NCBI RefSeq assembly: GCF_964204865.1
Contig: NC_135262.1
Span: 10,230,001 to 10,294,000 of the forward strand
Direction of reading: 5' to 3'
Length of the DNA: 64,000 nucleotides
Source: Styela clava
Taxonomy: Eukaryota
In this document: positions 1-36,928 of the stretch, one piece after another
Layout: each line of letters begins with the position of its first letter
How positions within the stretch are numbered: the first letter of the stretch is position 1
Made by a program: the position numbers and the translations under genes
The notes under the pieces: generated by a model
Database searches by the model: none
The model's input: only the letters and a program-made list of their open reading frames with translations
What the model was told of the DNA's origin: nothing

Positions 1-18
1 AATGGTGGTTACTTAAAC

Positions 19-1206: not shown

Positions 1207-1383
1207 ACTTAAACCACCCTACAACGGTGAGAAGTTCAACAATCCTCTCTCATCGAACCTGAGTACACTTGTAACTGTGATGACAAGAGTGTCTAACGAA
1301 TAATTTGCCAACCGCCAAGATTTTTTAAGCTTTAATGCCTTCATATTATTTACCTCACATAATTTATATTTTCTTTATTCCAG

Positions 1384-6418: not shown

Positions 6419-9400
6419 TCAATCAACTTCACTGTCCGGATCCGATACTCCGCCGGCATCCAACTCTTTCGGCTTTTCGGAATACTCCGGTGGTGGGTCG
6501 GATACTGATTCCGGTCTGAAAGTAGAATTTTTGACTCCACTGGGGCCTGCGTCTTCGTTTGTCAACAATGCTCCTCTGTCATCGTCTCCCAACTTTGTTT
6601 CGTTGTATTTGGGAGGGTTATTCATCCTATTATCTCCGCCAATTTCAACTGAACTATTTGTGGGAGTGACTTGACCCTGGTGCAGAAAGAATGGGGTTTT
6701 ACTGAAAAAATACAGTGAATCGACTTTTCGGCCACTTTTGGAAGAAATATCCATAGTTTTCTCAGAGAATAGTCGATAAAACTCAATAAAAAGTAGAAAA
6801 TTGTATGTATAGTGAAACAAAAGGGCACAAGTTACCACTAATATTATGAAGGGGGGGTTTTTCATTTTGATTTAAGTACAACTTGATACCTGTTGACGTA
6901 AAATTTAAAACATTTTAAGTCAACGGCTATGTCGATTGAAATTGACGACCTGAGGGTTGTCATGAATAATGAAATAGCTTGGCGTTAACTAGGGCTGGGC
7001 ATTTTCGATTAGCCGATGACTTCATAATCGAATATTTTTTTGAATTGAATCGAATACATGTAATTAAGTAGGACTTATTTACTGTAGTGGGTCCTGCAGA
7101 CACATTAATTACTGAAAACATGAAATCCATCATCCAGTTATTTCGCTGAGCCTTCAAACAGAATGAGAAACATGTTTCAGCAATTACTAACTAGGTAAAC
7201 GAGTCATATGTCAAAATTGCATTGTAAAAATATGGCTGCAATAAAGACAATTATAATATCCATCTCGACCTTTGGCGGACAGCAAAAACAAGACGGCGGC
7301 GATTCGGAATTTCCGTCTGAATCGATTCGAATAATTTACTATTCGATTCGAATATTCGATTTGAAATGCTTAGCACTGCTAGTAATGAATGTTAAATAGT
7401 ATAGAAATAAACGATAGATAACTTTTACAACTTATGTATAAATGAAAATTAGCCGCTAAATTATTGGAAAACTTGTTGAAAATGAAATGATATTTTTATT
7501 GTCTCCAAGCGATAGTCATTTCAAGAATTGTAGAGGTAATGAAATAATAACAAAATTTTATGTTTTCTACTCGAAACCTTACCCGTTTAGATTTCTTGTA
7601 GTACAAGTACAATAGAACCAGTAGAGCAACCGAAACAGCTATAATCGCAATAGTCAGTCCAACGATGGCTGCGGTACTCAATGAATTGTCTGAAAATGGG
7701 TAAATATGTGAATTATTACACTTCATTGGTCCTGTTATTTCTTCTCCATCATGTAATGGCAAACTTATATACCGTAGAACAAAAATCTTTTTTTTGAAAT
7801 TTCGATTTTGGCATTCATCAAAAAAGAAATGAACCATAAACTAAATATGCAAAACTATTTTAAATAAAACTGAAATAATTTTTAAAACTTTCTGGCTTAA
7901 ATTGTTGATCGGTAATCAAAAATTGCAAAAGGTTTCAAATTAGAAATTAAAATGCTTTCTCACTTCCCGGTTCTTCGTCATCGCATATTGGGTTCAACAC
8001 ACATAGGCCGCCCAATTTTTCTGCGCCTACTGGACAGATACAAGATTTCATTGGAACACATTTCTCCTTACATGTATCGCTTTCTTTATGACAGTAATCC
8101 AAACATTGTCTGATAAAAATAAGTTAACATTAATATTACCCTTTTTTCTCTTAATTTTGCCATCATTTTAACTGGAAGCACCCTAATTGAAACATAACCA
8201 TAGCCATTTTGCATTACAAAAGATGGTGGAACATTCATAAAAAATGCCGGATTGAGCGATGGGAATGTAGGCGGTCTGAAAATGACGAAAAATTAAACAA
8301 AAATCACCGACCATACATGACGATAGGAATAAACCTAGAAGAGAAGCACACCATATATCCGGGGTGCCTGGGGGGTTCGGCACCTTCAACTGCATCCATG
8401 GGACGGTCCACACTCGACTGCGTTATAACAATGCGTAGTGACTTCGGGTTGTCCAAAACGAATCGATATTCGAATGTAAGTGAATATATATCAAAGTATT
8501 TGAACACCTTTTCGGCTGATTTTCGAATAATTCCGAAGGATAGCCACTTTTTGCCATAAACGCGGTGTTGGTAAACTGCACGATATTATTAATTTTTTAT
8601 TCCTATTTTTGTATTTACAAAAAATAAAAGTATTAATACTGTGAAATACTGCGGGAATTTGTGGACACAAAATGTGTGGTAAACTGCCCGATTTACCAAC
8701 ATTTGAGTTACATTAATTGAATCAAATTAATACGACAGAGCATTTTAAATAGTGAATTTGAATATTTTGCGCAACACAAAATCATCCTAATAAGAAGTCC
8801 ATACTTTATATACCAAAATTATTTGCCAAAAAGCGGGATAAAGTATAAATTATTTTTCAAATTGTGACAATTTTTTCGTGAGTACGAAAATACGAATCAA
8901 AATTTAATTATAATCGGTCACAATACCAGTGGACATCAATTGTGTGGTAAACTGCACGATTATTATTAATTTTGATTCCTATTTTCGTATTTAGCAAAAT
9001 ATTAAAAGTGTTATTACCCAGCCTAAATTACAACGACAATCTGCGGACTTAAAATATGTGGTAAAGTGCAGGAATATAATTAATTTTTGATTCGTATTTT
9101 CGTGCTCACGAAGAAATTGTCAGAAGTCGGAAAAATAATTTATACTTTATCCCGCTTTTCGGCAAATGTTAAATATTCAAATCCATGACCGATGCCACTA
9201 TTTAAAATGTCCTGCCGTATTAATTTAGTTCTGTTAACGTATCCCATGCGGTTGCGTCAACTTAGGAAAAAATAAAAGGATTACTATTCTAAAGTATATA
9301 TCGCAGTAATTTGCAAACATGAAATGCCTGGTAATATAGCCAGGTTGTAGATAACAGTTATTGTTTATTGTATGCAAATTCCTTCATACACTATATATAA

Positions 9401-12400
9401 CATTTTTCACTTGTTTTTTTGCAATGTATTCGCACTCGAATTTTCATACTCGAAAATAATAATTTTCAAATGTATTCGGAATAGTGAACTATTCGGTATT
9501 GGTCATCTCTGAATATATTTGTTATATATGAATGCAATACCTAATGCAGTAGTGAAATACAGTTGCATATATTTGAATATATCACGAATGATTATGTCAC
9601 GAAGCAGTCCGTATTTTTTTTAATTTTTATTAAATTTTAACTAATTGCTCGGTATTTCAATTAAACTTCAATATTGTTTCTAAAAAATAAATTCCAATTT
9701 CAAAATATGTTTCTAATATTACCTTGGGCACGTTACCGCTAATTTAGCTGGTGCATTACAAGTCACAGCAGAGTTTGTTGTATCTGTGTTTGTAGTATAT
9801 GTCACATTGCTTACTGGAGTTGTGATAAGAGTTGAAGTAGACGAATCTGTAGTGGTGGACTCGACAGTGTCATTCGAATAAACAAATACCCTGAAGTATG
9901 ATATGATTGTTTTTAATAATACTGCTTTAATTATAAAATATGACAAAGAATGATTATCACAGACAAATTTCATAGCTGGAAATAAGTTTAAAGAAAGAAA
10001 GAGAAAATAGTTCAAACATATTTTGCTGGTTTTTATATAATTAACGAAATAGCCGATTCCCAGCGTTTTTTTTAGGCTTATAGAAATAGAACTTTTTTGG
10101 ACCTCCTGAAGTATGCGCACCCAGAAGGCGCACAACCTGAACTCAGGTTGTGTACCAGGTTAGGAATCAGGTTATGCGGCATCTTGGTGCTCATACTTCA
10201 GGAGCACTTTCTCCAAGAAATCATCAGATACTCTACTTCCATATTATGCCTAATAAAGTTGGAAACACAATGAAAAGTATAGAAAATTTATGAAATTTTC
10301 ATCGAATTACAAAGTACCAGTATAATAGAAATTGTTTGTAAATCTTCGCAAATTATTGACTTATACCGACATCTTGAAGTTTATTTACGGAACTGTACTC
10401 GTGAATCCATGAATAATCATTTACAAGATAGTTTTTCTAATTTTTTTCGTTATTTTATCAAAAGCTGTTATTGAAATCATAGCTCGTTTAAAAAAAAAGA
10501 CACGCTAGGTCAAACGGCATTTCAATCAATCGATCGGCCAGATATGTTTTCGATGGAGACTAGTCAAAATGATGTCGAACGTTTCATACAGAATTTGGTG
10601 GGTGCCGGTAAAGTGTTAAGCCCAACTGTGTTGGTATCTTCGGTTACTCATCTCAAGTCCAAATCGGATCCCCGTCACGTCATTCAGGGTGTAATAAATT
10701 TGTTAGACGCTGCCGAACATAGAGATTCTGGCCTGTCCAAAAATAGTGTCTCCTTACATTGTATACTGAGTCTTGTTCTGAGCGGAATACCTTAGTGACG
10801 TTCATATACAAAAATCAAAACAAACTTACGAGAAATATCCGAAATGTACATTGCACTGGCAAAATACTTCCGTTGCAGAGACCCAGGTGACCATACATCT
10901 TCCAGTTGACCATACAGAGACATCAAGATGGCGGCACTAAAATTATATCAGTTTTAAATACTTCGAACAAATTATTTTCAAGTTTAACATAGATAAAAAA
11001 GAGAGCGATGCTCGAATATATAGACACGAATCTGTCACAGTAGACTACCGTTGCCGCACTCTTCACAACTTCCCCTGACCACCAAATCTAAAACTAAGTA
11101 TTAATTTTATTGACATCCTCGCACACGAAATAAAAATACAATAAACATAAGGGAATTTTTGAAATAAATAAAAGTAATAAATTTCTAGCAAAGAATACAA
11201 TCTTTAACCACTGAAAATTTCAAAGAAATTGGTCCTGTAATTAAATAAAAAAATTTACAATAATAAGAAGAAAAACACCAGGGAGAATAACAAAACGACC
11301 CATAGGTTCACTTCGTTCCCAATAATGTTAGCACGATCGAATTTCCAAAGAGCGATTATCACTAACTGAACAACTGGTTCTATTGCAAAGTATAAGTTTG
11401 TAGCGTTTACCTGTACGATCGTATTGCCGTCTGTCGAAATAGTGAGATTTTTAAAAGTTATTGAAATCGTCTTGGTAAGACCAGTTGTATTTGCCAAATT
11501 ACTCGCATCTTCGCCGTCAGTTGGATTTCGTATGAAGAACTGTAAAAACAATTAATAACATTTTATTTTATTTTCACTAAAGTTTTATTTTGCCCAGCAG
11601 TCATGATATCTTACCGCAGCTATGGGACTGATTCTTGTGGCTTTTGCGTCATCAGACGTGGCGTCAGATTGTATGACGTCATTCATGTATCTTCCGTACG
11701 AAACACAAGCTCCCGGACAGGTATTCTATAAATAAATTAAATAATTATTATCAAGTTTAATCGATTTATTAACACATCGTGACTCCAAGAATGGGAATTC
11801 ATAAATTTCTTAATTACGTTTACGAAAATGAAGAAAATTATCTAACACAAAGGTTTCAGTGATCTAGGAAGCTTTGCACAAAAGTTATGTTGTTTCTAGA
11901 ATACGTTCCAAATGACCTGGTTTCTGTTTTCATGGGTCATTCTGTATTGTATTCAATACGAACTTGGAAAATGTCATTTTCATAAAAAAGAGACACCTAG
12001 AAGGCAGACAAATAACAGTAAAAATTATTTTCATTTTTTCTTTAAAAACTAATATTAAATACATACATTTGTAGAAGGATCGCAACGCCAGTTAGAATAT
12101 TGTGCTTCGATGTCCTCGCTGAACGAAAACTGTAGAAAAACACACAAGAAAAAATTTCAATCATGATGTTCTAGAAATGTAGTATATCCCTAAGTATACA
12201 CTACTACAGCTTCCTAGGTTTTGTTCAAAACGAAATTCTATAGAACCAAACATCCACCATCACGCGCATGGCATGGCACGCGCTAGGTAGATTTAGAAAT
12301 ATTTCTACCCTTTTGAGTCTAGTAGTAGCTAACTATGCATAAACCTAAGTAATCGAGAACTTTTTTAGGAGTAAACATTAAAATTTCCCAAACATTATAA

Positions 12401-15400
12401 ATCCATTCAAGTTTATTGAATATTAATTAATGAAATCTACTAGATTTTTCGAAAATCAAAAATAATGACGTATAACCTCAAACCTTGAAAATAAAAGCGT
12501 ATTTTGACATAAAATCTCACCAAAAGTGGGCCTGTAACATATGAATCTCCGTACGGCATTGGTACCTTCCTGGAACCGACCAATGAATAATCAGTCTGTG
12601 CGATTTGAATTGGCTCATCGTAGGCGACAGCATTGCAGAAAGATTTCTGCAAAAAATACGGAAACATTACAATACAGAAATGAAAGAACGTTTATAGTAC
12701 CCGAGATGGAAACTACGACGAAATATCACTATCCGATTGAAGAGACGTCGTCACCTGTGAAATTTGTTTTCAAATATTGATTTTAAGTTGTGTTTATTTC
12801 ATTGATAAAAAAAAAGACGTAGCTTCAGAATAAAGACAAACTCTAATAACACGGACAAACTCCTAAAGTCCTAGAAATAAGGACAAATTTTGACTATGCA
12901 TGGTACGGCACCCTATCTATACACAATAATCACACTGTATCATTGCGAAAACTTAGTCCTATTGGATGAAGAAGTAAGAAGTTTCTCTGGTGCGAATCGA
13001 ACATTGATTGAAGCCAGTAAGCCGATTCTTAAAGGTATCATTTCGATGTAATTACCATAATAAACTCAGTATCTTCTTTGAATTTGATCTTCGTGTTAGC
13101 TACCAGAGTTGCATCATTGCCAGGCGACAGGAAAATATTATCGAATAGAGATAACATTCTTTCAGCCTGTAAACAATATATATGATAACTCGATATGATA
13201 ACAAATTAAAATCATAAAATTATATCGGTAGCAAACATACCTATAAATCAGTTATGGAAAACTACTCATGGATAGGAGGGGGATTTTTAAACATGTCGTC
13301 ATTTTTTTGCAACAATATAGAACTACTTAAGGGCAATAGATTGTATGTTTCATACTAGTTATGCTTGAAATGGGCTCGTCGTTGGTGGCAATCTATATAT
13401 CCAAGATCAGTGGGGTATTTCGAGGTTGAATTTGGACTTCTCTCTACCTTCTGTACAGTATTATCTTTTTATGCCTGTATAAAGTGCTTTTTTACTAGGC
13501 ACTGTAGAAAATGTGGAAAGCACATATTTTTTCAAACAGTATCTTTAACATTAAAAAAAAAACTAAACAACATTTTTAATGGAAAAAGATGGCACTCGTT
13601 ATTTAATTTATCCCAACCTATCAGAAGCTTACTGACCATATCAACAGGAATCGTGTTTACAGTGGATTCCGTTTCAATTGCTCTACGTCGTCTGCGTGAT
13701 GAAGAATCCGCTGTATATATATATATAATGGATAGTTTAACAGGAAAATGTATTTTTATTTATATGAGCAAAAAAATGGAAATTGTATAAGTGCATCGTC
13801 CCAGGGTGACTAAAAATCAGAACTCATAAATATCTTCATTAATTATATATAAAAATGAATAACATTTATTTAACTCGTTAACTTCTGTTTGTGTATGATT
13901 GTAAACATAAGTTTCAGGAATCTAGGAAACTTTTCATAAAGGTTGTGTTCTCTCTAGAACATGTTCTAAATGACTTTGGTCTTTTTTTTTGTTTTTGCTT
14001 TGGGGTCATCCTGTACTTGGGTGCATTCATTATCAGATTTTTATCTATTCCCAAATTGGCGCTCCAGAAGTGTATGTACCATGGAGGTAACTAATTTTGT
14101 TCGCCTACTTTACATCAAGGTGTGTAAAAGGACTGAGACCTATGGGCATGGGGTATATTCATTTGGCTAACACAGACGATCCCCGAACTCGGAATAGAAC
14201 TGAAAATAGGGAAAATCAAAATAAAATTAAGGCTTAACCCTAACCTGGTACACACACTACGGGAGTACCCTCAAATTCACTTGAGTAAAAAGTAAAAATT
14301 CAAATCTAGACACTAATCTCATTTTACCGAAATTTTTACAATTTTAAAAGTTTGAACTTTTGATAAAAAATGACATGTTGTAAAGTTCACCTTGATCGTA
14401 AAGATCTTTCAAAATTCTGCTTATCACATTCAGAGCAATTTCTTTAGATTCAGATGAAGTAGTTAAATCACCGTCACTAAATGTTGAAATCACGCTCGAT
14501 ACCGATTCCAGAGCGTCTAACGCATCGCTGAAAACAAAACATTACGTCGTAAATCTATATAAAAAGGTCTTGCCCGGAGAAGGAAATCTTATATGATTGC
14601 TTGGTCTCTTGTCCGCTTTGCTGATTTTTCTGAAAAAACCTGAACGCCCAAACCGTCAGTGACTAATTATTTACCTAGAACCTTATACCTATACTAACCC
14701 GCATAAGGTTTCGCGCAAAGTCCTCCCTCGCTCTCAGTGGGGATTGTCGACAATTTTAAATTTTCAGAGTGGGAATTTCATACTTTCAATGGTAATAATA
14801 AAAGTAAAAATTTTTGTCAGAAACTCATACGGCATCAAGTTTACTAAGCGTCCATAACAGTTTATTAGAAGAGGTTTACATACGTCAATGTCTTTGTTAT
14901 CAAAATCGATATCGGAGTCAATATTTTTCGACCCCGGATCTCACAGCTCTGGTTATGCGTGCTTACGTTTCAGATGATGGAGTAAATGAATTCATTTGCT
15001 TTATTGCTGATTCTGCCAAGTCTAGAACTTCTTTCTTTCTGACGTTATCGCCACCAACTGATTTTCCAATAAGAAGAACTTTTGAGAATGTTTCAGATCT
15101 GTCTCCTGCAAAGAAATCAAGTTGTTTGAATATATAAATCGATCGAGGTATAAAGAAGAAAGTAGAGAGACCGAAAAGCAAGAGAGAGAAATAGAAATTA
15201 GAAAAAGGTGGAAGATAAAATGGAGCAGAAAAGAAAAGAAAAAATTAGGGAAGTACGAGATTTGTATCTGGACTCTGATTTGATATCAGATGCGCATAAT
15301 GTTTACCAGTCGATTCTGCTTTTATTCTAATTTCCGACTTCGCTTTTGTAAAGCTAGATACAAACACTCTGCCGTAAAAATTGCGTGATTGCTCGCATAA

Positions 15401-18400
15401 GATCTCTGAGAAATATATAGCCCATAGTGCAGCACTGATTAAAAATAATCGCTTCTAAAAATCAAAGCGAACATCGCCTGACATCCGCGTTTGTATGGTG
15501 GCATGAAACAGAAGAGAAATGTAAAACAAGTTTCTTCACGTACGGCATCGTTTGCCAAGATAATATGACTTTTGCTTTTGATCGCCCATTGTTGCCGCCC
15601 CGACGGAAGAGATACAAAAGCGAGAGACTGTAAATTGAAGTCTCTACAATCTACATACCTGCAACAAGAGCTTGAACGGCTTCGTTTACCATATCCTGTA
15701 CTACTTCTTCATCTACTACAGGACTTCCAGTTGTGTTATCACTTGCAATGGGTAAAACTATGACTTGAGTTATGACGCTACCAATAGTGTTCTTATTTTC
15801 ACCGATTTGAACAAATGAATACAGAACCAGTTTATCACCACGATCTGGGTCACCTGAAAATTTGAGAAAAGTTAAGAACAGGTTCTGAAAAGATTGACTG
15901 GTTATAAATGTTCGGAATTGTCTTGCCGAAAGTCTTGTCATCTCAATTGAGCGTTTCGTTGAATTGCCAGAATTCATCATTGTATCTCTGATACGATTCG
16001 GAGAAAAGGCACCAACATTAATAATAAGAGTGGGGTGAATATGTAGTACCACTTAATAATAGATTACCTGGTGGTAGGTAGGACGATACAGACGAGGAAT
16101 CACTGAACTCTCCTATAGAAGTCAAACTTCTTCTTTTTCCTTCAGCGTTTTTGGTTGTATATGCAAATTTGTACATCAGGGGTTGATTTTCATTACCGCC
16201 AACCCACCCATCAGCTCGTATGTTAAATTTAGTGCTAAGGGCAGTCCCGGAGGAAGGTTCAACCTGAGAAATAAATTGATTTCAGCTGTAATAAAGAACA
16301 AAAAAATTCTAACGAAAAAGAGGAACTCAAAAAATAAAACAGCTGGTTATAGGGAAAAAAAAATCAATGATAGGAGAGTATAAGTGAACAAATGAATACA
16401 CATACCACAATATTTCCACCAGTGGGCAGAGCATCAATAACCTTGACGATTATTTCGGAATATACAGTCATATCTGATTCATCTTTCCCTTCTTCGAGTG
16501 GATGTATGGTAAAATCTGGAACAGCTTCAACTAAAAACTTATAACTCGAACCGGGCTCAAGAACACCTTTTTTCAAAACCAAATCAATTCGGCTTGGCTT
16601 CCTATTGTTTAACAACGAAATATAAATTAGATTTGAAAATTTGATAACGATTATTTAATTAAATAATTAAAATATCGATATTCAAATATTACTCGTTTAT
16701 CTCCAATTCTTTTTGAAGAGTTGTAACAGCCGCGTCAGACAATTCGATGAAGGAATAACCATCTTCTTCAACGCAACTCCAAGTTACTATCATCGTCCAG
16801 GTCTTACGTTCATTCCTGAACGCAACAGTAGAACATGGGAAGATAGAAAGAAAAGCAAAAGCAGTCTGACTTAAAGATCACTTAAAAAAGTAACTGACTT
16901 TCTATTTGATTCAGTAAATTACTGTGGAAAATGAGTTTAGAGAGAAAAAGCACCAAAATGAATTCAAAAATATGACGTTATTGAAATCAAGAGACAAAGA
17001 TCCAAATTCCACTCAAAAGAATGGAATGAGATTTTTCTTTTTCTCTATCTCTCTCTTGTAGTCTAATAACTTCAAGTGATTTCATCAGGAAATTTAGTTT
17101 TAGAATTATGATTATAAACCAGAAGACATTTTTTCTAGCTGTTTTTTAATAATAGAAAGTACGAACGGTTACCTCAGAGTGTCCCGAACCGGAAAGATAT
17201 TTTATTGTTTTGGGGAAGAAAATATTACATTGAATTGAATGTTGTTTTACAGATATTGTTTAGTTATTTAATATTATTGAGATACATAAAACAATTAGAA
17301 CTGTACAAAAGCTTGACTGCGAGTTGCCCGTATACCTAGCTGATAATCTGTTTGTGATTGAACAAATAACAAGAACAGAGCTTCATCGCATAGCGAGGAA
17401 GGAATGAAGAGTTCCATAATAGACAAAGGCAGGTTTTTATCGAAAGAGATTGGGAACTACAGTCTTACCCGGTAATCGTAGCCTTCACTCGCAAAGGTTT
17501 GCTCGGTATAAAAGCTTGGTCGTCAGCAATTGGCCGAGTTCGAATTGTTGGTAAATTATCACTCGCATCTTTGATTCTTATTTTGATGGAAGAAGTTTCT
17601 TCCCGATCACCAGATCGCACCATGAGTGTTATCTTCATACTGAAACAAGATAGAAATTATTAAATACATAGACACGACAGTCGAGTAATAGTACAATAAG
17701 ACCTTAGCAGAGTACTCTAATTCGCTGAAAATATCGGCGGACAAGCGTTGGAATAAATCGTTTCCATATTTCATAAGAAGTGTTCTCATGAATCCAAATA
17801 AAACAGTCAAATTTTTGGTTAAATGCCGGGTCCCATCGAACTCAAAGAAAATTTAAAACAAGTAAAATATCAGTAACAGCGTCCAACCAAGCATTTTAAA
17901 TAAACTTTAAGTTAGGAAAATTTGAATTCAATCAGTTCATCAGTTACACAGAAAATCAATTTTTTACATAAGACAACAACAAAAATTTAACGAAATGTTC
18001 TCTAATTCCACTTCGTGTCAAATAAATTAGATTGAAGAAGAGTGACAGGCGACAGTCTAATAACGAATTAGGTTCAAATATTATTTCATGGAGATTATCA
18101 TACTCAGAAAATTCTTTGAAAAGTTTAGCTGGTATTGTCAAAGTATCTTTGTCTGATGATAAGTAACGAACGAATGCTACTTCTGCAATTTCAACTATAT
18201 CTGTTGCTCCTTCTTTAATAACAAGGCACGGCCCTCCTCCATCCAGCATTTCACAGGACCAAGAATACGTCAAGGTACCTCCATCCGGATCCCTGCTTCT
18301 ACTGTACAATGTCTGAATAGGGGGAAGACGTTTGGTTAAAATTAGAAGTAATAGATTTGGTCAAACTGGTGATGTTCATCAAAATTGCAGTAGGAGTATG

Positions 18401-27400: not shown

Positions 27401-30400
27401 TTGTTTTGATTTACAATTCCTATACTGCGAATAGTAGTACAACGATATCATACTTACCGATCTATATATGCTTTTCCATGGCAAATCCCTGTGCAATCCT
27501 TAATATTTTTAGCCTCTTTACCCCTAAATTGAACAAAAAAATGTATGAATTTTAGCATGTGTGGATCCTAACGACAGGAATGAATTTTCTGTAGTGGGCA
27601 TGATTTGATGATTTCTACCTATTCCTTAGCTTAGTGAATAATAGCGCTTATCAAATAGAAATCCTACTATAGAAGAAATCCACTCGGTAGAGTTGGTGTT
27701 ATAAATATCTTTGCCAAGAAACAATTTAGTGTGTTTAAGCAAACATGATAGAATAGCAGAAACGATTAACCATGTGATGTTGTTCATCTATGAAAAAATG
27801 ACTTTATTTTTTAAACAGATTACCTCTTTTGACAGAAGTTACAATCATCGTAATAACTTGTATTGAAGCAGCTATTCGCACAGTCAAGTTTCGTTGGTTT
27901 CCTGCGTGTTCCACCACCAACACATTTTCTGCACTGATCAATATAGGCAGCTGAAAGGAGAAAAGCAACCACGTTAAATTTTTAGATATTATTATCATTT
28001 TAAAGTCAACATGATGCATTTTTATAGCATTAACTTACTTCCGTTTATATCACCATTGCAATCAACGCAACTCTTTCCGTTTCCCCCGCAAACTCCACAT
28101 CGATCTGTTAATACTTTCATCGATGATCGTTTGCCATCACAGCCCAATCTTTCTATGCTAAGCTTCACTCTTTCTTCACTCAATAGTTTCGTAAAATCAA
28201 GAACTTGGTTTTGATCATAAGGTGCCTTCACGAAAGAATAATACGTTGTGCTATTTTGTGAATGTTCAGAACTATCAGCCTAATTGAATATGGTGAGGAC
28301 TTGTGATGAGGCGATTCATATACATTGTTGCCAGCTTTCTCGGTTGTGTTTGGTGATTGAATTTGATTTGCAATAACAAATGCATTTAATTTTGCACAAA
28401 TTTGAAATAGTTCTAGGGTTCTATGTCTGAAATGCTATTTCTGTTAGCTTGCTAGCCAATGTGACTCATATTTAAGTGCATGGACACAAATTTGTTAATA
28501 TTAGTACTGGGAGGGTAGGTAACACATGTGAATTGGGGACTGGTAACAGTGCTGAGTTTTGTGAATCAGAGACATCCACCTGGAAATTCAATAGCGTAAA
28601 AGGATAATTTCGGCGCTAAATATTCCAAACAACAGCGGATTCTATTACTTTGAAATATCTTAAACTTTGAAGTACATACCGCAAAAACACAGATTAAAAT
28701 AATAAAAAAAAATAATGCAGAATGTTGGAATACTACTACGAGGCATACATATTACTCGAGTTAAAAAATTAAAAAGTTTAGTCGCACACTTACGTCTATA
28801 TCACAATTAGGGTCAAGCTTGTAGGTACCAGTAACAACTATGGCTCCAGCATTCTCCAGCACTGATTTGGCTTTCGCATAAAAAGTGTCATTGGCCATAA
28901 CATAGCCATCTGGTTTAGATATTTTGAACAATGACAAATCAATAACAGTATTTAACCAAGCTTCTGAAGACTTCCAGAAATAGTCTAATTTGTCCGGTAT
29001 AAATTTCAACCTAGTTTCAGTCGATAGGAGAATAATTTTGGCGGTGGTTCCAGCTTTATAAAAGCATTCTGTGAAAATATAAATAGCAAAGATTAAATGC
29101 CGGTTCATATCAAGCGTATAACAACAATTTAATGAAGGAAGATCAATAATTTGAAGTGAGCTCATGAAGTTTGAAAACCACAGGCATTGACAATGGACGA
29201 GATGGCGAGAGATCGATCATGATATCTTTTACTAGGACTAGAACACAACAGTTATGAAACCTATACATCAAGCAATGAATATTAGGATAGCACAAACGTT
29301 CTGCTTAAATGTGTATATATGCAAGTTAGTTAAAGGTTTTAAATATTACCTGTATTGTCAATAATTTGTCTTCTATTTCGAGTTGCAGGTTTTTCTACGC
29401 CAAATGCATTGATAAGGCTCGTCCATTTTTGACATGTTTCACAATGGAATTGCCATTGGCCTGAAAATATATAAAAATTGATGCCATCTGACAGCTGTGG
29501 ATTATGAAAAAGGGAATCTGTTTCTTCGTTTATTTGCGTATATATACCTATTTTGCTTGTTGTTGGCTTGGCCAATGCTAAACCTATAATTGCTCCGTCT
29601 TCGTCGCCTCCCGACATGATTGACGTAACGACATCCCCAACTTTGAAGCCTGCATAATCACGTAGGTTGAAGGGAACGGCGGGAAGTCGATAGTGCTTTG
29701 GTAGAGTCAACACAATTTTTTTTGCAACGCCTGAAATCTGTATATATATGAATAAAAGTAATGAATAAAAATGAAGGAATGTGTGAAATTTTCACGTATA
29801 ATCTTAATTCTTAGCTCACGCATATCTTACGCAAAATACGTGAAACTAATTTGACTTATCCAGCAAAATACGTGAATGCGTAACATCACCCCAATAGCAC
29901 AAATCAATGTATTAGGCATGTGGTTTTGAAGTTATTTCAGTTTTACATTTTTAAAATTTAATGTCAATATAAGTGCACATGACTACCAGTCATACAAGTT
30001 TATTTCCTACAGTATACAAAACAGTTTTATGACCGATACCATTGTTATGCATTGTGGATTCATACACACGACAAGCATGATTCATTGATGTATGATGATA
30101 AAGAAACGAGCACAACGATGAATCATGCTTAACAAAGAATGCTTTGGAGTAATTCGGTACAAAATGTTAATGTTAATTGAGTTTAGAAAACACAATTTTA
30201 ATTTTAGTTTCAAAGATAGCAATACCTTTATTTTTAATGTAACCATGTTCTTGTCATCAAGTTTTATCATCAAATCCTTTATTCCTGGTTGGAATCCACT
30301 TCGAACGGTGATTTTGATTTGTCCAGCAAGACTAACAGCGCCAATTCTTGGAGTATAAAGTTTCCAAGCCGATATTTTATTATCCTGCAGCGTTTTTGAT

Positions 30401-33400
30401 CAGATTAAAAGTCAAGCATTAAAATAGCAATCACTATTCATATTGTAGAAGCAAAATGGAAAAAAGGGTGTATTTTAGTGTGCAAACACTTGGAAATAGG
30501 GAATAAGATTTGAAATTGAAGAAAAAGGTCAGAATATTTCACCTGTGATTGCTATCTTACTTCTAAGTAATGCAAAAGTGGGAAGCAACAAAACTTGAAT
30601 AAATCGGTAAAATAATTGTAAAACAACAAATAGTGGATATTTCGATGAATTGGCTCTTAGTAGGCCCACCTATATTTCTTATTTTGAAAAATGTGATTTT
30701 CTGGAGCAACACAATTTGTATCATATGCTTCTCAATTATTTATAAAAGAGGGTACTTAGACGTAGTCTACCGTTCTTTTGCAAAATAGGAAAGGTCTTTT
30801 GGTCTGACGATTCTAAAATGTCGTATTTATGGCATTGACTACACAATGCTAACTATAATGTCAGTTTGTGATATGGAAAGTAATTTACCTTATACTCAAT
30901 CTTTAGGTCACTTGTAAGAATCTTCTCACTAATTAGAATTTTTATTCGAGGCAAATTCACAACACGATCAATAATCGAATTTAAGAATCGACCAAATGGA
31001 AGGTACATCGAAATACCGAATTCTTTCAACGATTCAAACACTGACCAAAACAGAAAAAATTACATAAATGACGAGTGTGATCTTGTGGTTCACAGGGTGT
31101 ATACAACAACACAGAGTATGATGTAAATAGAGCTTATTCGCAAAAGTTGAGTTTTAAATAAAAGTGGATTTTATGATGTATCTATATATGTTTATTTGCT
31201 CAAATAGTTAAACATTATAACAGAGACGGAATACATGTTCAAGACCTCACTGGCCTGAGTTGTGCTACATGTACCCTTCACAAGTATAATACCAGTTTAG
31301 GACTTATACGTTATATAATATAACTATACACATACATGTATACCAAAAGCACGATCGCAGAGAATTTAGCGAGTTTGCAAACTTTTTTACATATTCGAAT
31401 GTTACACGATTTTAAATGCAAGTTTGTTCAAAACTATCAGAAGAGGAAAGATAAAAATCAGACTGCCACGACACGAGATAAAATATAATATCGGCAGATA
31501 CTGTCATTGATTTACAGTAATATGAAATATAATGTAATAATCAAACCTTTTGAGCCAACAATTTCGTTAATTTCAATAAAGTCTCGCAAATTCATCAAAG
31601 CTCCTGTGCTTGCCTTGAAATCGTAGAAGTTCGAAACTTTTTTCAAAGTAAACGTCAATTGTTTGGCATCGATTTTTGATGGTAAAGACAGTGCAATCAA
31701 ATTTTTCACTGAAATGAAGTAAAATATGAATATTATCTTCTCCATAACTATGGCCATGTGTGTCTGAGGACCAAACCATTACGTTATTATCAAAATACAA
31801 AATGACTCTTTAGCTAAAGGCTTCTAAGCGAAACAATAAACAAATCTGTTCGTGATGCCATGGACCAATGACTGGCCTCCTTTTTAGAAAGAATGACATG
31901 AAGGCCACACTTGTATCTAGACCTCGAATATTAGCAACCTAGTTTATGAGCAATTCACATTTGATGAAAAATTTAAGAGACATGTTTCAAATATTTTATA
32001 CACATGGTCCAAAAAGTAAAATTTGTCAATAAACCAAATTAACCTTCAATTTTTTCTTAAAATATCGCACAAGGATATTGTAGAATTCATGTCTTTATAG
32101 ACAAAAGTTGTTCCACTTGCTGTACAAAAATCGGCAATTACAAATAAATTATTTCTCGAAATTGTATATTACCAAAGATTTCTGTCTAAAACAGATGACG
32201 GACAACTTTCAAAAAATTATAAAAACAGCAGTTTTTATTTTTATCTTTTTTGTGATTGATAAACTTTGTTAACATCTTCCTCACCTTTTGACAATTCTTC
32301 AAATGAATTGTTGTAGTTATTTGCCGGTGCAACGGCTAACACTCCGATACCAATAGAATTTCCTTTGGTGAGTAAACGTAACGAAGCTTCGGAGCTGAAC
32401 GTATCTGTAAATGAAACAAATTGTTTCTTATATAAATATTAATAAACTTAACTGCGTTGCCATATCAGATTACACATCTCGGGTTCAAAGTTCAAATCGC
32501 CAGAATCTGAATTTAATAAACTGGGTAGGCAATGCGGAACTTAGGATTCCGGTAGTAGTAGCTACATACACATCTTTAGATATCAGTGTGGCTGCTTGTA
32601 AACGGTCTTGTTCAGAGAGAAACCACTTGTAAACATCGTATAAACAAACGAAATAAATTAAATTTGTAGTTCAAGTTCACCTTCGTATTTCAAGCATCTC
32701 CAGTTTTCAGGAAGATTTTCAGCGCAAAAGTCTTTTGTTTCTTCTTTCTCTTCAGTGTATCTTCTTTTTCTTTCTTTTTGATCGTCTTTAACAATCCACA
32801 TCCCGGCGGTAATTCTTGAAACCCATTGAGTAACGTCAGATCCAAGATTTGATTTGACATTGATGGTACCGTTCTCATCCGATTGTACAAATTTTTCTTC
32901 AATTTTATCGTTCATATTCAGTGGAATCGAAGATGGTTTGATGGCGATTGTTACATTTTCGTTTACAGATGTTGGCATGGTCGTTACCCTTCCATATTCT
33001 GGTCTTGTTTTGTTTTCTTTGAGAGGTTTGTCGGTTTTATTGTTTTTACCGATACCATTTCCTTCCAATACACTCATCATGAAGCTGGATGTGTTGAAGT
33101 CTGGGCCAACGTTGATCCACAACATACCCCAAAACGTGTCGGACTTCATAAAATCGACATTTTTATAGCTATCCGTCCATTTTGATGCTGTTTTGAAGTA
33201 TATCGGTATATCACGGGTGTGATTTGTTTCTGTTTCAGACATTCTGGGTAATACTAGACCAGGAACCGCATTTTCCGCGCAGCTCCTTACAGAAGCGCTG
33301 GTCACAGTACTGGACGATATCGCACTTTGTGCGAAATCAAAACTTTTGTTATAATTATCATAATAGCCTGGAATATCATCGGGCTTATTACCATGCTGCA

Positions 33401-36400
33401 TTTCGGCGATGTTAGGCATATTGAATCCCCCATTCATTGTTGAAGCTCCAACCATTGAAGTTACAGATTGTTGGAATTTTGAAATTGCTTCTGCCAACGT
33501 CATGTTTAGTGACATGCTAGAGGCATTCAGGGTTCTCTTTAAAGTCGTGCAGATATCAGTTCCATCAGCTTTTATTTCTTCCGTAAAAGGTATCTCAAAC
33601 ATTTCATCAGCTTCAGGCATTTCTTTTTCCTTCTCTTCCTTCATTTCATACTTGACCGATGCTGCCAAATTTTTTTGGGACGCGTTGCAAAATATGTCTA
33701 CCAAGTTTTCTATCACATCAACAAGTTTTATAGTTCTGGTATAATTGGATAAGTTTTCTAAAATACAATCAGACAATGTTGCGTTTTGGTGCCGAGCGTG
33801 ATCTGTGGAATTTAGAAATACTTTCGCATTGATGGCATCCCAGAGTTCCGTCGCAAATTTTAATACTGCAATATTCAGGTCGAGTGAGCTTTTCAGAACA
33901 TCAGCATGCTTGTGAAATTCGGTAACAGGATCGATAAAATCACTTTGGCTACGAACAAAACTTGCAAGCTTTTCAGTCAAATCATTCTCATTCGATATAG
34001 ATGCATAACTTTTCAGATTTTTGATCAAGGTTTCAAAATTGTTGACTGCAGTAGAAACAGATCTGGGAAATGAAAGCGCATCTCCCATAATCATTTTCAA
34101 CGAGGTTAAAAAGTTATCGAATTCTTTCGAATATTTTTGTATAACCTTTGCAACCAGTCGGGGATTGTATGTTTTTGATTCTTCAGATGGGTAGCTCGCT
34201 TTAGATAGGTCGCTCGCTTCATATGAACCGCTAATAATCTTCATTAAACTAGAGAGCAATTCTTTTATACCGCCGACACCAGGTTTTAAGATTTCAGTAT
34301 GAATATCATAAAAATCCATGATGGCATCTTTGAACTTCATATCATCCCTTATAAGATCTGAAATCATTGGCCTGGAATATTTTGAACTGTTTCCTGAAAT
34401 CTGTATTAGCCTTTTAATCAGTTCCACAAAGTTTGTATAACTTAAGTAATGTTCCTTGTCTAGCCCTCTTTCGTTTTTCAGTGCTTGGAGAACAGTATCA
34501 AAAGTAACGTTACCGTTTGTATAGCGGTTTATTATATCGGCAAGCATTTGATCTTTATTTGCAATCGGTAAAGGTGTGATAGTCGGGTCACCGTTTCCTA
34601 ATGCTTCAACTAGATGTTTGAGAAATTCCATCAATGAATGCCGTACATGTTCTTTGATACAGACAAATGTGGTAACATTAAGATCGAGTTTATGAATTTC
34701 AACCAAAAGACGCCTAAACGAATCCAGTTTTTCTGCATCACTGTTCCTTAGGCTTGCGTTATGCATTTTCTGAATAAATACGCGAAATCTAAGAGTTTTG
34801 TTTCTATTGTAATCACTACAATTGCTTGAAAATAAGGTGCCGTTCATTTGTTCAAGTAGCTTTGAGAATGAATGATTTCCTTGTGAAGCAGAAAATCGAT
34901 TCAAAAATTTCAGAATCCTCTTTTCTATGTTCATTTTTGTACCGTTGCCCATAAACTCGTTCGTTTTGTTCACACAAGACATCACATTGGTAAGATTGAG
35001 ATATTTCCCGGGTGAAAGTTTTTGAATAATTTTACCAATCTGGAGGGAAACGGATGGATTTGAGAAAAGCCGTGTTAAAAGATACAACATCGTTTTATTT
35101 TGCACCAAATCCGAATCATTCATCATTAACATGCAATTTGGAAAAGCAACAGCTGGAAGAGGATGTGTCTTTGAAGCATTCACTTTAAAGGGTAAGTGAA
35201 GTACACCCTGGTGCATCTGTCTTTTGAAAGCGTCAAAACTAGATGCCACGCCACTTTTTGGTTTCAAAAATGCCACGGGAAGAACTATCGGTCGATGAGA
35301 AAAATTCGCGTCACGAAGGTTCTCTTTCACGTACATTAGGCTGTCTTCATCGGTCACATTGTTTTTCTTTATGTCATAAAGAACGTACGGATGTCCGGAA
35401 ATACCCTGTTTTAAGATTTGAGCCCCTGGAAATGCATGTTTCCACCAAGTGGAATCGTAACTACCAATGAATAGGGTGACAGGTCCAACCGCAATCTTGC
35501 GAACAAATTTTGGTTGTTGGCCACTAACACTCATGTTCATTTTTGTTCCTGTAAAGTTAAGACCAAGCGACATTCCTCCACTTCCAACCGATGGAATCCC
35601 TAGAATTGAGATGTAAATAAAGCAAGTGGTAGGTTGCACAGTAAGGGGTTTCGATACCCAAATGACTACAAATGAACATTTCTACAATATTGATAATGTC
35701 TTGCGGCACTCTTTTCTTCAAAATAGTCAAAATCCAAAAAGTCAAAATTTGAGTGATTACCGAATACGGGATGTTTCAACGTTTTTATTAGTTTCCCGGA
35801 GATTCAGTTGGCTGAAGATCTATTGCTAATAAATGCATCTCATTTACCCTCATTTCCTAAAATTATTCTTTGCCAATGCGCCTTCTTCAGTTGTCAATTA
35901 TAGGTTAGGAATTTCAATTATTGCAATAGCCATGAAATCATCAAAACAAAATTTTACAATGTCATATTGATGCATCGATCATATTTAAGTAGATAAAATA
36001 GAGTGAACTACCTTGGCAATTGCAAGTAATACACCGTCTAACACGAGATATGTTATACGGGCATCCTTTCAAACAAGCTGCGAAGTTATCCGGACATATC
36101 GAGAAAATGTGAAGTTTATCATCCTTTTGTGCAGTCGCGTTTACAGCTTGAAGAATCGGGGGCTTGCTAGAGAACGTAAACAGAAATGCATGTTAAGTTT
36201 ATAAAATACAAGAGACAAATTATCAAATTAATATGCACGAAGCCGAATAACTCACAGCCGTATAAAAGTAGTCAATGTGACCTACACAGAAATCTGATTA
36301 TTCATATCAAAGTTACAAATCAAGCTCCCAACTGTAGTAAATTACATCAGCAACAGTAAACTTTTACTAGAGCTGCGAGTTCGAATGTAGGAATGTACGA

Positions 36401-36928
36401 ATAAGGGATTGATTATAATCCAAATGGGCGAAAAAATAATGAGTATTTTATGTCAAGTACATAGAAATATTCTTTCTTACCCGGTCGCAAAATACGGTGG
36501 CTTAAAGTTATGCTCCTGCGACAGTGACGTTGAAACTAGAATACAGAAAAAAATATTGAACATTTTTTTTTGAAACGTGAAAAGTCGCAACATGGCATCA
36601 CCACTTTGCTGTGATAACATATCAAATTTGGTGATCATGGTTACCAAGAAACAACGTACACTTATGGCATGTAAAAGATTTGTTTGAGTGACATAATCGG
36701 TATTAGTCACAATTTATTCTATAAATTAATTTTGAGGCTAGTTTATTTTTATTCAAGAATATATATAACTAATTTTATCCCACTATGACCTTCCATGAAA
36801 TTCAATTATCATCTACTATTAAACTTTATACCATCGTGATCTAAATCTAAGGTGCTTAAAGACCTATAAATAAAGAAAGACTTACTCAGAACAAGTATCG
36901 TTATTGTCCCTAATAACACCAACGCCAT
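6419..36928 (-). CDS. Giant single-pass PKD1/REJ-like receptor (about 3256 aa): signal peptide, antistasin-like, orphan helical region, DxCGxCGG repeats, IPT/TIG, PKD/REJ, GAIN/GPS, Thr-rich stalk, TIL, TM, PPxY tail
   Basis: 44 GT-AG exons joined with consistent phases, total 9771 nt (divisible by 3). Exons in transcript order: 36886-36928, 36481-36535, 36012-36166, 32681-35599, 32285-32404, 31547-31708, 30889-31040, 30226-30384, 29350-29737, 28794-29068, 28039-28279, 27824-27950, 27458-27523, 26767-26960, 26190-26417, 24828-24924, 24492-24740, 23615-23767, 23369-23495, 22436-22553, 20670-20785, 20210-20437, 19615-19791, 18827-19052, 18621-18751, 18104-18312, 17469-17639, 16693-16815, 16406-16601, 16068-16263, 15659-15853, 14967-15105, 14391-14527, 13637-13710, 13056-13166, 12521-12646, 12067-12129, 11615-11725, 11312-11539, 10830-10936, 9723-9890, 7964-8109, 7583-7689, 6419-6676. 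N-terminus MALVLLGTITILVLISTSLSQE. REJ-type motifs SRDPDGGTLTYSWSC and PSSGTALSTKFNIRADGW...PLMYKF...YLPPG. IPT motif SIEP...GGGDVTITGEDF...VSDTQVRCTFP. GPS CRHLDVSVWSTGRCMV...FCQCNVHFGYFSVF. TM AIVGLTIAIIAVSVALLVLLYLYY. Confidence 0.88.
6990..7378. mobile_element. Degenerate hAT-type MITE with CGAAT/ATTCG subterminal repeats
   Basis: Begins TAGGGCTGGGCATTTTCGA and ends GAAATGCTTAGCACTG. Clusters of TTCGAAT at both ends, like the element at 58900-59644. No intact TSD. Confidence 0.55.
8565..9240. repeat. Foldback-like element: long inverted arms plus dispersed direct repeats
   Basis: Inverted repeats 8822-8858/9130-9166 (36 of 37 identical) and 8724-8754/9196-9226. A TGGTAAACTGCACGAT-like unit recurs near 8570, 8676, 8944 and 9058. 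Confidence 0.65.
10103..10204. mobile_element. Short palindromic MITE (about 100 bp)
   Basis: Ends CTCCTGAAGTATGCGCACC and GGTGCTCATACTTCAGGAG are inverted repeats. A second copy lies at 41444-41544 in the opposite orientation. Confidence 0.75.
22146..22420. repeat. AT-rich imperfect tandem duplication (period about 190 bp) in an intron
   Basis: TATATCAxCAGGAAAATxATTCCCATT...ATTATCATTCAATCA occurs near 22147 and again near 22336. Confidence 0.6.
24170..24466. mobile_element. Partial hAT/Charlie-type MITE
   Basis: GGCCCGC subterminal motifs and a right end TTGACAACCCCTG. Left TIR decayed. Confidence 0.55.
25790..26170. repeat. GGAGTC-repeat MITE-like element
   Basis: Recurring (G)GAGTC(G)...AAATTTTxGTCATT units. 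Confidence 0.45.
32681..35599 (-). CDS. 2919-nt exon 4 of the REJ/GAIN receptor gene; N-glycosylation-rich, predicted largely helical ectodomain with no family I recognise
   Basis: Covered by the 993-aa ORF 32658-35639. Acceptor ATTCTAG and donor GTGAAC, phases 1/1 consistent with the flanking exons. Confidence 0.88.

What the first reader, a model, noticed from the sequence alone, without database searches (positions are those of the whole stretch)
6419..36928. A polycystin-1/REJ-type ectodomain on a single-pass receptor with a novel-looking modular architecture
Seen: 44 in-frame exons give about 3256 aa: signal peptide, antistasin-like module, about 970-aa orphan region, Cys-rich DxCGxCGG repeats, IPT/TIG, PKD/REJ, GAIN/GPS, Thr-rich stalk, TIL, one TM helix, about 90-aa tail, stop. 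Known: in PKD1, PKDREJ and PKD1L proteins the REJ-GAIN unit is followed directly by TM1, PLAT and a multi-pass channel-like region; sea urchin REJ1 is the main single-pass precedent and has C-lectin/EGF domains instead. Inference: this is a channel-less polycystin-like adhesion, mechanosensing or gamete-recognition receptor. I do not recognise this domain combination from any characterised protein, and it is the best candidate for an undescribed system in the window.
Basis: partly seen in the sequence, partly recalled or inferred. Interest (0 to 1): 0.82.

Follow-up and report, generated by a model that had tools for sequence, protein, structure and literature searches.

The report
Channel-less single-pass REJ receptor gene
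This is a real, intact 45-exon sea-squirt (Styela clava) gene for a 3176-residue cell-surface glycoprotein that carries the polycystin-type REJ module but no channel part. It belongs to an unstudied family found in several invertebrate phyla, so it is worth a look but is not a new kind of system.

Summary
On the minus strand, 36928..6419, 45 GT-AG coding exons encode exactly RefSeq XP_039256719.2, "uncharacterized protein LOC120333377" of Styela clava (3176 aa).

- **Confirmed:** signal peptide, REJ domain (Pfam E 5e-41), six CGxC Cys-rich units, a Thr-rich stalk, one TM helix, a 91-aa tail and the stop codon.
- **Weaker:** IPT/TIG, the GPS motif (four Cys and Trp kept, cleavage Thr replaced by Gly) and the TIL-like knot.
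- **Not supported:** the antistasin call.

There is no PLAT or channel part. The genome's six other REJ loci all have one. This gene ends against a convergent permease gene.

It is not unique. Collinear homologues exist in Clavelina, a sea star, an acorn worm, a bivalve and crustaceans. All have one C-terminal TM, and all 14 carry an R-x-[KR]-R site 190-263 residues before the GPS motif. I infer convertase cleavage in place of GPS autoproteolysis.

Residues 1-1190 match nothing and differ about 3.5 times more between haplotypes than the rest.

The closest described proteins are the single-pass sea-urchin SpREJ8/9.

Function is untested, because no RNA data could be reached.

Verdict: a new variant of a known kind.

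The scan's notes already held the GPS observation for this window.

The parts
6419..36928 (-). Whole coding region: 45 coding exons, 44 GT-AG introns, 9531 nt CDS. It equals RefSeq XP_039256719.2 (LOC120333377, Styela clava), 3176 aa.
36886..36928 (-). Exon 1: ATG and most of the signal peptide (MALVLLGTITILVLISTSLSQ).
36016..36096 (-). Six-Cys knot, aa 57-83 (C-x6-C-x3-C-x9-C-x2-C-x-C). It has no Pfam hit and is absent from Clavelina.
32681..35599 (-). Exon 4, 2919 nt, aa 85-1058. Lineage-specific region with 32 N-glycosylation sequons and no detectable relative anywhere. About 4% amino-acid difference between haplotypes.
28794..30384 (-). Exons 8-11, aa 1203-1447. Start of the family-conserved core, an unnamed domain with nearly invariant G1223, G1285 and W1387.
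26413..28141 (-). Six Cys-rich CGxC units, aa 1476-1640, with about 20 invariant Cys. This is the best-conserved block of the family. It resembles the end of the ADAMTS Cys-rich domain.
23695..24676 (-). IPT/TIG-like domain, aa 1769-1854 (exons 18-19).
15723..20437 (-). PKD-like/REJ module. The Pfam REJ hit covers aa 2162-2597 (15723-18977). Similar repeats start at aa 2002.
9878..15722 (-). GAIN-like region, aa 2598-2955, between REJ and the end of the GPS motif.
   Evidence: the fold itself was not testable
13679..13696 (-). Polybasic site, aa 2716-2721 (R-R-R-R-R-A), 200 residues before GPS Cys1. It is conserved in 14 of 14 family members. Inferred proprotein-convertase cleavage site.
10830..10936 (-). 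Exon 41: GPS motif, aa 2916-2951. Four Cys and WSxxxC are kept. H-L-T is replaced by (V)-H-F-G, so there is no nucleophile.
9761..9877 (-). Thr/Ser-rich, mucin-like stalk, aa 2956-2994 (56% S+T).
7983..9760 (-). TIL-like 10-Cys knot, aa 2995-3049, split by intron 42. Its Cys spacing is shared with Clavelina.
7601..7669 (-). The single transmembrane helix, aa 3063-3085, followed by YYKKSKRG.
6419..6676 (-). Exon 45: most of the 91-aa cytoplasmic tail, with two PPxY motifs (PPKY at 6605-6616, PPEY at 6482-6493) and TGA at 6419-6421.

Best explanation
**Shown.** The locus is one intact gene of Styela clava. It encodes a type I, single-pass, heavily N-glycosylated surface protein of 3176 aa.

The order of modules is:
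- signal peptide;
- a lineage-specific N-terminal region of about 1200 aa, mostly one giant exon;
- a conserved core: an unnamed domain, six CGxC Cys-rich units, IPT/TIG, PKD-like/REJ, and a GAIN-like region ending in a GPS motif;
- a mucin-like stalk;
- a TIL-like knot;
- one TM helix;
- a 91-aa tail with two PPxY motifs.

It has no PLAT domain and no multi-pass channel-like part. It is the tunicate member of a conserved but uncharacterised invertebrate family with this core and topology.

**Inferred.**
- The GPS cannot cut itself, because the Thr nucleophile is Gly. It is also not next to a membrane bundle, so the tethered-agonist or channel-partner logic of polycystin-1 and adhesion GPCRs does not apply.
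- Instead, the family-wide R-x-[KR]-R site in a Ser-rich loop about 200 residues upstream is probably cut by a furin-type convertase in the secretory pathway. This would give a two-chain ectodomain held together by the GAIN-like fold, or a shed N-terminal fragment.
- The variable N-terminus is the likely ligand or recognition surface.
- The PPxY tail probably recruits WW-domain proteins (Nedd4-type ligases or adaptors) for turnover or signalling.
- The most likely role is a cell-surface recognition or adhesion receptor. Which tissue, and whether gametes are involved, is open.
For: - **Gene model:** identical to XP_039256719.2.
- **REJ:** E 5e-41.
- **Hydrophobic segments:** only the signal peptide and one TM.
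- **No channel part:** no PLAT or PKD_channel in the protein or near the locus. All six other REJ loci of the genome show REJ>GPS>PLAT>channel in order.
- **3' boundary:** bounded by a convergent amino-acid permease gene (window ORF).
- **5' neighbour:** a BRCT gene.
- **Family:** Clavelina E 1.6e-51 at 96% coverage, plus echinoderm, hemichordate, mollusc and crustacean proteins. BLASTP Styela 1267-3033 against Clavelina 1760-3457 gives E 7e-145. REJ is found in 13 of 13, with none carrying PLAT or channel. Each of the 12 full-length members has one C-terminal TM.
- **GPS:** four Cys and Trp kept, HLT lost. The canonical GPS in the sea-star homologue scores 23.3 bits. The family profile hits four adhesion-GPCR GAIN chains at E 0.005-0.06.
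- **Polybasic site:** present in 14 of 14, at -190 to -263 from GPS Cys1, and in six of them the only such motif in the protein. Joint chance is about 1e-13.6 under independent placement.
- **PPxY in the tail:** Styela, Clavelina and Acanthaster.
- **N-terminus:** no hit in 1.84 billion representatives or against the family. There are 58 differences in 1370 aa against 21 in 1733 between haplotypes, Fisher p 1e-7.
Against: - No transcript, protein or expression evidence could be obtained.
- Cleavage at the polybasic site is inferred from conservation only.
- The GAIN fold was not modelled. GPS and TIL are below Pfam cut-offs in Styela itself.
- The family members are related, so the joint probability overstates independence.
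- The haplotype comparison uses older RefSeq models and amino acids only. It cannot separate relaxed constraint from diversifying selection.
- The family list comes from a word-index search. Absence from vertebrates, insects or cnidarians is therefore not shown.
Confidence: 0.72

Rival explanations
1. It is an ordinary 11-TM polycystin-1-like gene whose PLAT and channel exons were missed by the reader and by RefSeq.
For: REJ followed by GPS is the hallmark of PKD1-like genes, and the genome has six such loci.
Against: - There is an in-frame TGA in exon 45, with 3' UTR-like sequence and AATAAA/ATTAAA signals after it.
- A convergent permease gene lies within about 5 kb.
- No PLAT or PKD_channel hit lies within 150 kb on this strand at E<=10.
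- All 13 aligned homologues from other phyla also lack PLAT and PKD_channel. The 12 full-length ones end after one TM and a short tail.
Confidence: 0.03
2. It is a sperm-surface gamete-recognition receptor, working like sea-urchin REJ1 by binding an egg-coat ligand through its variable N-terminus.
For: - REJ proteins with one TM act this way in sea urchin sperm (PMC1934368).
- The N-terminal 1200-1440 aa are orphan, glycosylated and about 3.5 times more polymorphic than the rest. This is the pattern expected of recognition proteins.
Against: - There are no expression data.
- It has no C-type lectin or EGF domains like REJ1.
- The sea-urchin proteins that resemble it most in size and layout, SpREJ8/9, are expressed in embryos, not gonads.
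- Polymorphism could equally reflect relaxed constraint.
Confidence: 0.15
3. It is mainly a structural or protective surface glycoprotein, a membrane-mucin-like protein. Its ectodomain is shed after convertase cleavage into the extracellular matrix or tunic, with no signalling role.
For: - It has 57 N-glycosylation sequons and a mucin-like stalk.
- It has a conserved cleavage-type site.
- Non-tunicate homologues carry a SEA-like juxtamembrane module with a G-S-[IV]-[IV] motif, as membrane mucins do (by eye; no Pfam SEA hit).
- A coral REJ protein is found in skeletal matrix after presumed cleavage (PMC4890752).
Against: - PPxY motifs in the tails of three deuterostome members suggest regulated trafficking or signalling.
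- About 1800 aa of folded domains are conserved across phyla, which argues for specific binding rather than bulk coating.
Confidence: 0.2
4. Two adjacent genes were fused in silico: an N-terminal orphan gene and a REJ gene. This is how the first RefSeq release annotated them (LOC120333062, 854 aa; LOC120333377.1, 2267 aa).
For: The older models were separate.
Against: Both old models end and begin inside the same uninterrupted 972-codon exon 4 of this window. The second old model starts with 26 unrelated residues. The split therefore looks like an artefact of the earlier assembly. There is no stop or gap in the window.
Confidence: 0.03

Closest known systems
Sea-urchin SpREJ8 and SpREJ9 (GenBank EF216328, EF203419; Gunaratne et al. 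2007, PMC1934368)
   Same: [quoted passage not shown] A sea-star protein, P0036, is a collinear homologue of the Styela protein.
   Different: SpREJ8/9 are described as having partial REJ domains. CGxC repeats, TIG and a polybasic site were not reported for them. Their function is also unknown, apart from embryonic expression.
Sea-urchin REJ1 (suREJ1/SpREJ1)
   Same: Single-pass, REJ plus GPS, a large glycosylated ectodomain and no channel part.
   Different: REJ1 is 1450 aa, with EGF and C-type lectin domains, and is sperm-specific. The Styela protein has CGxC repeats, TIG, a 1200-aa orphan region, a degenerate GPS about 105 residues from the membrane, and a TIL-like knot.
Polycystin-1 family (PKD1, PKDREJ, PKD1L1-3; six loci in this genome)
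   Same: REJ module followed by a GAIN/GPS-type region.
   Different: No PLAT, no 11 TM and no PKD_channel. The GPS lacks the H-L-T triad. BLAST-level similarity to the genome's own PKD1-like loci is absent.
Adhesion GPCR GAIN domains
   Same: GPS four-Cys/Trp pattern. The family profile weakly matches the GAIN ends of ADGRB2, ADGRF1, ADGRG1 and ADGRG6.
   Different: No 7TM. There is no cleavable HL|T. The motif is separated from the membrane by a stalk and a Cys knot, so it cannot act as a tethered agonist on its own bundle.
ADAMTS cysteine-rich domain (ADAMTS_CR_3; ADAMTS5/13 structures)
   Same: The GCDG...DxCGVCGGDNSxC motif.
   Different: Here the unit is repeated six times and stands alone, without metalloprotease, disintegrin or TSP1 modules. 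The same repeat is abundant in bacterial secreted adhesin-like proteins.

Membership tests
Polycystin-1 (PKD1) family | REJ domain | tested here: met
   PF02010, E 5.3e-41, aa 2162-2597. Exon-level hit of 31.6 bits in the own-genome scan.
Polycystin-1 (PKD1) family | GPS motif with H-L-T/S autoproteolytic site just before TM1 | tested here: not met
   The motif is present (PF01825 18.3 bits against cut-off 22.5; four Cys and Trp aligned). The triad is (V)H-F-G, and the motif ends about 105 aa before the TM.
Polycystin-1 (PKD1) family | PLAT/LH2 domain after TM1 | tested here: not met
   No PF01477 hit in P0003 at E<=10. None lies within 150 kb on this strand.
Polycystin-1 (PKD1) family | 11 TM with a channel-like last six (PKD_channel) | tested here: not met
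   One TM by hydropathy. No PF08016 hit near the locus.
Single-pass REJ proteins (SpREJ1/8/9 type) | REJ plus a GPS-type motif, exactly one TM and a short tail | tested here: met
   Literature definition in PMC1934368.
Single-pass REJ proteins (SpREJ1/8/9 type) | Orthology to SpREJ8/9 | not tested
Only a sea-star homologue was compared.
Uncharacterised CGxC-TIG-REJ single-pass family (UniRef 'PKD/REJ-like domain-containing protein') | Collinear homology over the core (Styela aa ~1250-3050) | tested here: met
   Clavelina E 1.6e-51. A single BLASTP HSP of 1843 columns, E 7e-145. A 13-sequence alignment with 32 invariant columns.
Uncharacterised CGxC-TIG-REJ single-pass family (UniRef 'PKD/REJ-like domain-containing protein') | R-x-[KR]-R site 190-263 aa upstream of GPS Cys1 | tested here: met
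   RRRRR at 2717-2721, position -200. Present in 14 of 14 members.
Uncharacterised CGxC-TIG-REJ single-pass family (UniRef 'PKD/REJ-like domain-containing protein') | One C-terminal TM, no PLAT or channel | tested here: met
GAIN domain (adhesion GPCR / PKD1 type) | GAIN fold (helical subdomain A plus beta subdomain B ending in GPS) | not testable with these tools
   The region is spliced from 10 exons, and the only protein ids are over 1200 aa, so no structure job was possible. Indirect support: a 320-aa spacing between REJ and GPS, and profile hits to four aGPCR GAIN chains at E 0.005-0.06.
TIL domain (PF01826) | 10-Cys pattern recognised by the profile | tested here: inconclusive
   No hit in Styela, on exon 43 alone or on the full protein. 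The spacing C-9-C-3-C-3-C-6-C-3-C-5-C-1-C-10-C-5-C fits. The Clavelina orthologue scores 20 bits against a cut-off of 24.5 at the same place.
Antistasin domain (PF02822) | Profile match to the 6-Cys unit | tested here: not met
   Exon 3 has no Pfam family at E<=10. The module is absent from Clavelina.
IPT/TIG (PF01833) | Profile match | tested here: met
   21.1 bits against a cut-off of 20.9 on P0001, 17.4 bits on exon 18 alone. Hit in 4 of 13 family members, best E 6e-9.

The most novel reading that the evidence does not exclude
The family is an old, channel-independent branch of the REJ/GAIN superfamily. In it, convertase cleavage at a fixed loop has replaced GPS autoproteolysis. In Styela, the lineage-specific, hyper-polymorphic N-terminal 1200 aa make the protein a self/non-self or gamete recognition receptor of a kind not yet described in ascidians.
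Probability: 0.15. Interest if true: 0.65.

Novelty: new variant of a known kind. Interest (0 to 1): 0.45.

Why it matters
REJ and GAIN modules are studied almost only in polycystins and adhesion GPCRs, where they sit on a multi-pass bundle and cut themselves at the GPS. This locus shows a conserved family that keeps the REJ-GAIN ectodomain on a single helix. That family is seen so far in tunicates, an echinoderm, a hemichordate, a mollusc and crustaceans. Most members have lost the GPS triad, and all keep a convertase-type site at one position.

If the cleavage is real, it would be a natural test of what a GAIN-like domain does without autoproteolysis and without a tethered-agonist target. 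It may also give a function to the long-unexplained sea-urchin SpREJ8/9.

For Styela, the orphan, polymorphic N-terminus is a candidate recognition surface in an animal group known for polymorphic recognition genes.

It does not change any established view. The gene is already annotated, and single-pass REJ proteins are known.

Tried and rejected
- **My own splice-site/codon gene model.** It gave 48 exons with several errors. I replaced it with the exact map to P0003.
- **Pfam on raw open segments.** Little signal, because domains are split by introns.
- **Full HMMER search with exon 4.** Only the gene's own protein matched.
- **AlphaFold2 of exon 4 without an alignment.** Mean pLDDT 35, unusable, so no fold search was run.
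- **ESM Atlas on exon 4.** Best score 0.82, below the meaningful range.
- **Word searches on aa 2000-3176 and on the REJ-GAIN part.** They found essentially only the protein itself. Candidates were saturated, so these blanks meant nothing, as one search then showed.
- **phmmer of P0003 against PDB.** Only weak ADAMTS motif hits.
- **The genome search with P0003.** P0001 found no paralogue.
- **Paper searches.** Searches for the locus, for Styela with polycystin, and for REJ-like-domain proteins found nothing on this family.
- **Structure of the GAIN/TIL region.** Not attempted. It exists only as a spliced sequence or inside ids over 1200 aa.
- **Joined exon model.** I built it only inside a local script, to check identity with P0003. 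It was not sent to any search or fold tool. Full-length searches used the database ids P0003 and P0001.


Full report
**What is there**

The window has no N runs. It is AT-rich (about 34% GC), and it is G000:C17:10230001-10294000 of a 377-Mb genome.

A full HMMER search with the 972-codon exon at 32682-35597(-) found one real match, P0001. Its cluster holds RefSeq XP_039256719.1/.2, "uncharacterized protein LOC120333377 [Styela clava]".

The current version, P0003 (3176 aa), maps to the window with no mismatch. A junction solver gives 45 coding exons from 36928 to 6419 on the minus strand. All 44 introns are GT-AG, and the joined translation equals P0003, followed by TGA at 6421-6419.

I built the joined sequence only inside that local script, as an identity check. 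It was not sent to any search or fold tool. Exons were searched by reference, and full-length searches used the database ids.

Its 44 exons are explained by intron 9 (29461-29547), which is in frame and stop-free.

**One gene, not two, and not truncated**

The first RefSeq release split the locus into an 854-aa model and a 2267-aa model. Both break inside the same uninterrupted exon 4 of this window, so the split was an assembly artefact.

Downstream of the stop there is ordinary 3' UTR-like sequence. A convergent amino-acid permease gene on the plus strand begins at C17:10223318 and runs into window 1-1700. Upstream lies a BRCT-domain gene.

Own-genome profile scans find seven REJ loci. Six of them show REJ, then GPS, then PLAT, then PKD_channel in order. 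This locus has neither PLAT nor PKD_channel; the nearest PLAT hit is 164 kb away, on the other strand and on the gene's 5' side.

Hydropathy shows only the signal peptide and one helix at 3064-3082, followed by YYKKSKRG.

**Domains**

- **REJ** is unambiguous: E 5e-41, aa 2162-2597.
- **The Cys-rich block** (aa 1476-1640) holds six D-x-C-G-x-C units. These touch the ADAMTS_CR_3 cut-off and match the ADAMTS5 Cys-rich structure.
- **TIG** is at the cut-off in Styela and clear in homologues.
- **GPS:** exon 41 hits the Pfam GPS model below its cut-off (E 0.0034). I aligned it with 14 GPS exons taken from the same genome.
- **After the GPS** come 39 residues of 56% Ser/Thr, then a 10-Cys knot with TIL spacing. 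The knot has no Pfam hit in Styela.
- **The 'antistasin-like' 6-Cys unit** has no profile support.
- **The tail** carries PPKY and PPEY.

**The orphan N-terminus**

Exon 4 has 32 of the protein's 57 N-glycosylation sequons. It has no relative among 1.84 billion representatives, no useful Atlas neighbour and an unusable single-sequence model (pLDDT 35).

Against the family found later, aa 1-1190 give no hit even at E 10. Similarity starts at about aa 1250.

I compared the window with the older RefSeq models, which come from another haplotype or assembly. There are 58 differences in 1370 aa in the N-terminal part, against 21 in 1733 aa in the rest and 2 in 436 aa in REJ (Fisher p 1e-7 and 2e-5). 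One patch, aa 595-615, has nine changes.

**The family**

Two word-index searches on the C-terminal half found nothing. A third, on aa 1441-2160, found 34 proteins. They include:

| Organism | Protein | Length | Detail |
|---|---|---|---|
| Clavelina lepadiformis | P0009 | 3572 aa | E 1.6e-51, 96% coverage |
| Acanthaster (sea star) | P0036 | 2153 aa | |
| Ptychodera (acorn worm) | P0029 | 1754 aa | appears C-terminally truncated: ends within REJ; no TM or polybasic site |
| Sinanodonta (bivalve) | P0011 | 2116 aa | |
| Four decapods | P0017, P0018, P0019, P0035 | 2878-4051 aa | |
| An ostracod | P0037 | 2565 aa | |
| Unnamed metagenome/assembly proteins | several | | |

- Styela 1267-3033 aligns with Clavelina 1760-3457 in one HSP (E 7e-145).
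- All 13 aligned members have REJ, and none has PLAT or PKD_channel.
- The 12 full-length members have one strongly hydrophobic C-terminal helix; the remaining one (P0021) breaks off in the pre-TM hydrophobic stretch. The tail runs from 8 aa in a seemingly truncated model to 147 aa.
- The sea-star protein has a canonical GPS with HLT (23.3 bits). Most others have lost the triad.
- Clavelina has a sub-threshold TIL hit (20 bits) just before its TM, with the same Cys spacing as Styela, and a PPPY tail motif.
- A profile of the family matches KIAA0319L PKD domains (1.2e-6), the ADAMTS5 Cys-rich domain (4.6e-5) and, weakly but consistently, the GAIN ends of four adhesion GPCRs (0.005-0.06).

**A conserved convertase-type site**

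Every one of 14 family members has an R-x-[KR]-R motif 190-263 residues before GPS Cys1, in a Ser-rich stretch. In Styela it is SSS-RRRRR-A at 2716-2721. In six proteins it is the only such motif in 2000-4000 residues. In 12 of 14 it falls in the same alignment column.

Random placement would give this with a joint probability near 1e-13.6. That figure overstates independence, because the proteins are related.

With the GPS triad lost in most members, I infer that convertase cleavage takes the place of GPS autoproteolysis. This is an inference from sequence only.

**Comparison with what is known**

Sea urchins have three single-pass REJ proteins. [quoted passage not shown] They are the closest described proteins. 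I could not test orthology.

The protein fails the PKD1-family tests for PLAT and 11 TM, and it fails the adhesion-GPCR test for 7TM and a cleavable GPS. No paper in the library mentions the locus or the family.

**Limits**

- The GAIN fold could not be modelled under the rules for spliced sequences.
- The taxon range comes from a word-index search and is a lower bound.

**Verdict**

This is a real, intact, already annotated gene. It is a single-pass, channel-less REJ/GAIN-type receptor and the tunicate member of a conserved, unstudied invertebrate family. Its variant features are six CGxC units, TIG, a degenerate GPS, a conserved polybasic site and a TIL-like juxtamembrane knot. In Styela it also has a lineage-specific, polymorphic N-terminus.

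It is a new variant of a known kind, of moderate interest.

Noticed in passing
window 29461-29547 (-): Intron 9 (87 nt) is in frame and has no stop. If retained it would add 29 residues.
   Followed up: partly
window 34008-34070 (-), aa 595-615 of exon 4: A patch with nine amino-acid differences in 21 residues between the window and the older RefSeq model P0004 (another haplotype). It is the densest cluster of variation in the gene.
   Followed up: partly
P0007, P0008, P0010, P0020: Bacterial proteins of 2000-3500 aa carry Big_9, Cadherin-like and Por_Secre_tail domains. They match the CGxC repeat block at E down to 6e-76. The repeat therefore seems to be a widespread unit with no Pfam model of its own, apart from the end of ADAMTS_CR_3.
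   Followed up: no
P0011, P0012, P0017-P0019, P0021, P0035: Non-tunicate family members have a module between stalk and TM with a G-S-[IV]-[IV]-x-x-F motif. It looks SEA-like, and SEA domains cut themselves at G|S. There was no Pfam SEA hit. Tunicates have a TIL-like knot in that place.
   Followed up: no
G000: C4:14.096-14.104 Mb(-), C4:0.617-0.633 Mb(+), C14:19.206-19.232 Mb(+), C10:14.850-14.866 Mb(+), C18:10.420-10.443 Mb(-), C17:14.550-14.567 Mb(+): Six canonical polycystin-1-like loci with REJ, GPS, PLAT and PKD_channel hits in order. The C10 locus showed no channel hit, and C18 no GPS hit. The C17:14.55 Mb locus is the one another reader called Themis-like (s1-809838).
   Followed up: partly
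window 40252-40917 (-) and 45905-49513 (-): The upstream neighbour on the same strand has a BRCT_2 domain exon (E 3e-15). It also has a 1203-codon open frame with no Pfam hit, which is probably one large exon of the same gene.
   Followed up: partly
window 62162-62404 (+): An exon matching the amiloride-sensitive sodium channel family (ASC, E 1.6e-10).
   Followed up: no
window 1363-1704 (+) and G000:C17:10223318-10224166 (+): An amino-acid permease (AA_permease_2) gene runs into the window and ends convergently with the REJ gene. The last-exon ORF in the window gave no Pfam hit by itself.
   Followed up: partly
P0009, P0036 and window 6482-6493, 6605-6616 (-): PPxY motifs occur in the cytoplasmic tails of the three deuterostome members checked: Styela has two, Clavelina has PPPY and Acanthaster has PPVY. 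None was seen in the crustacean or mollusc tails.
   Followed up: partly
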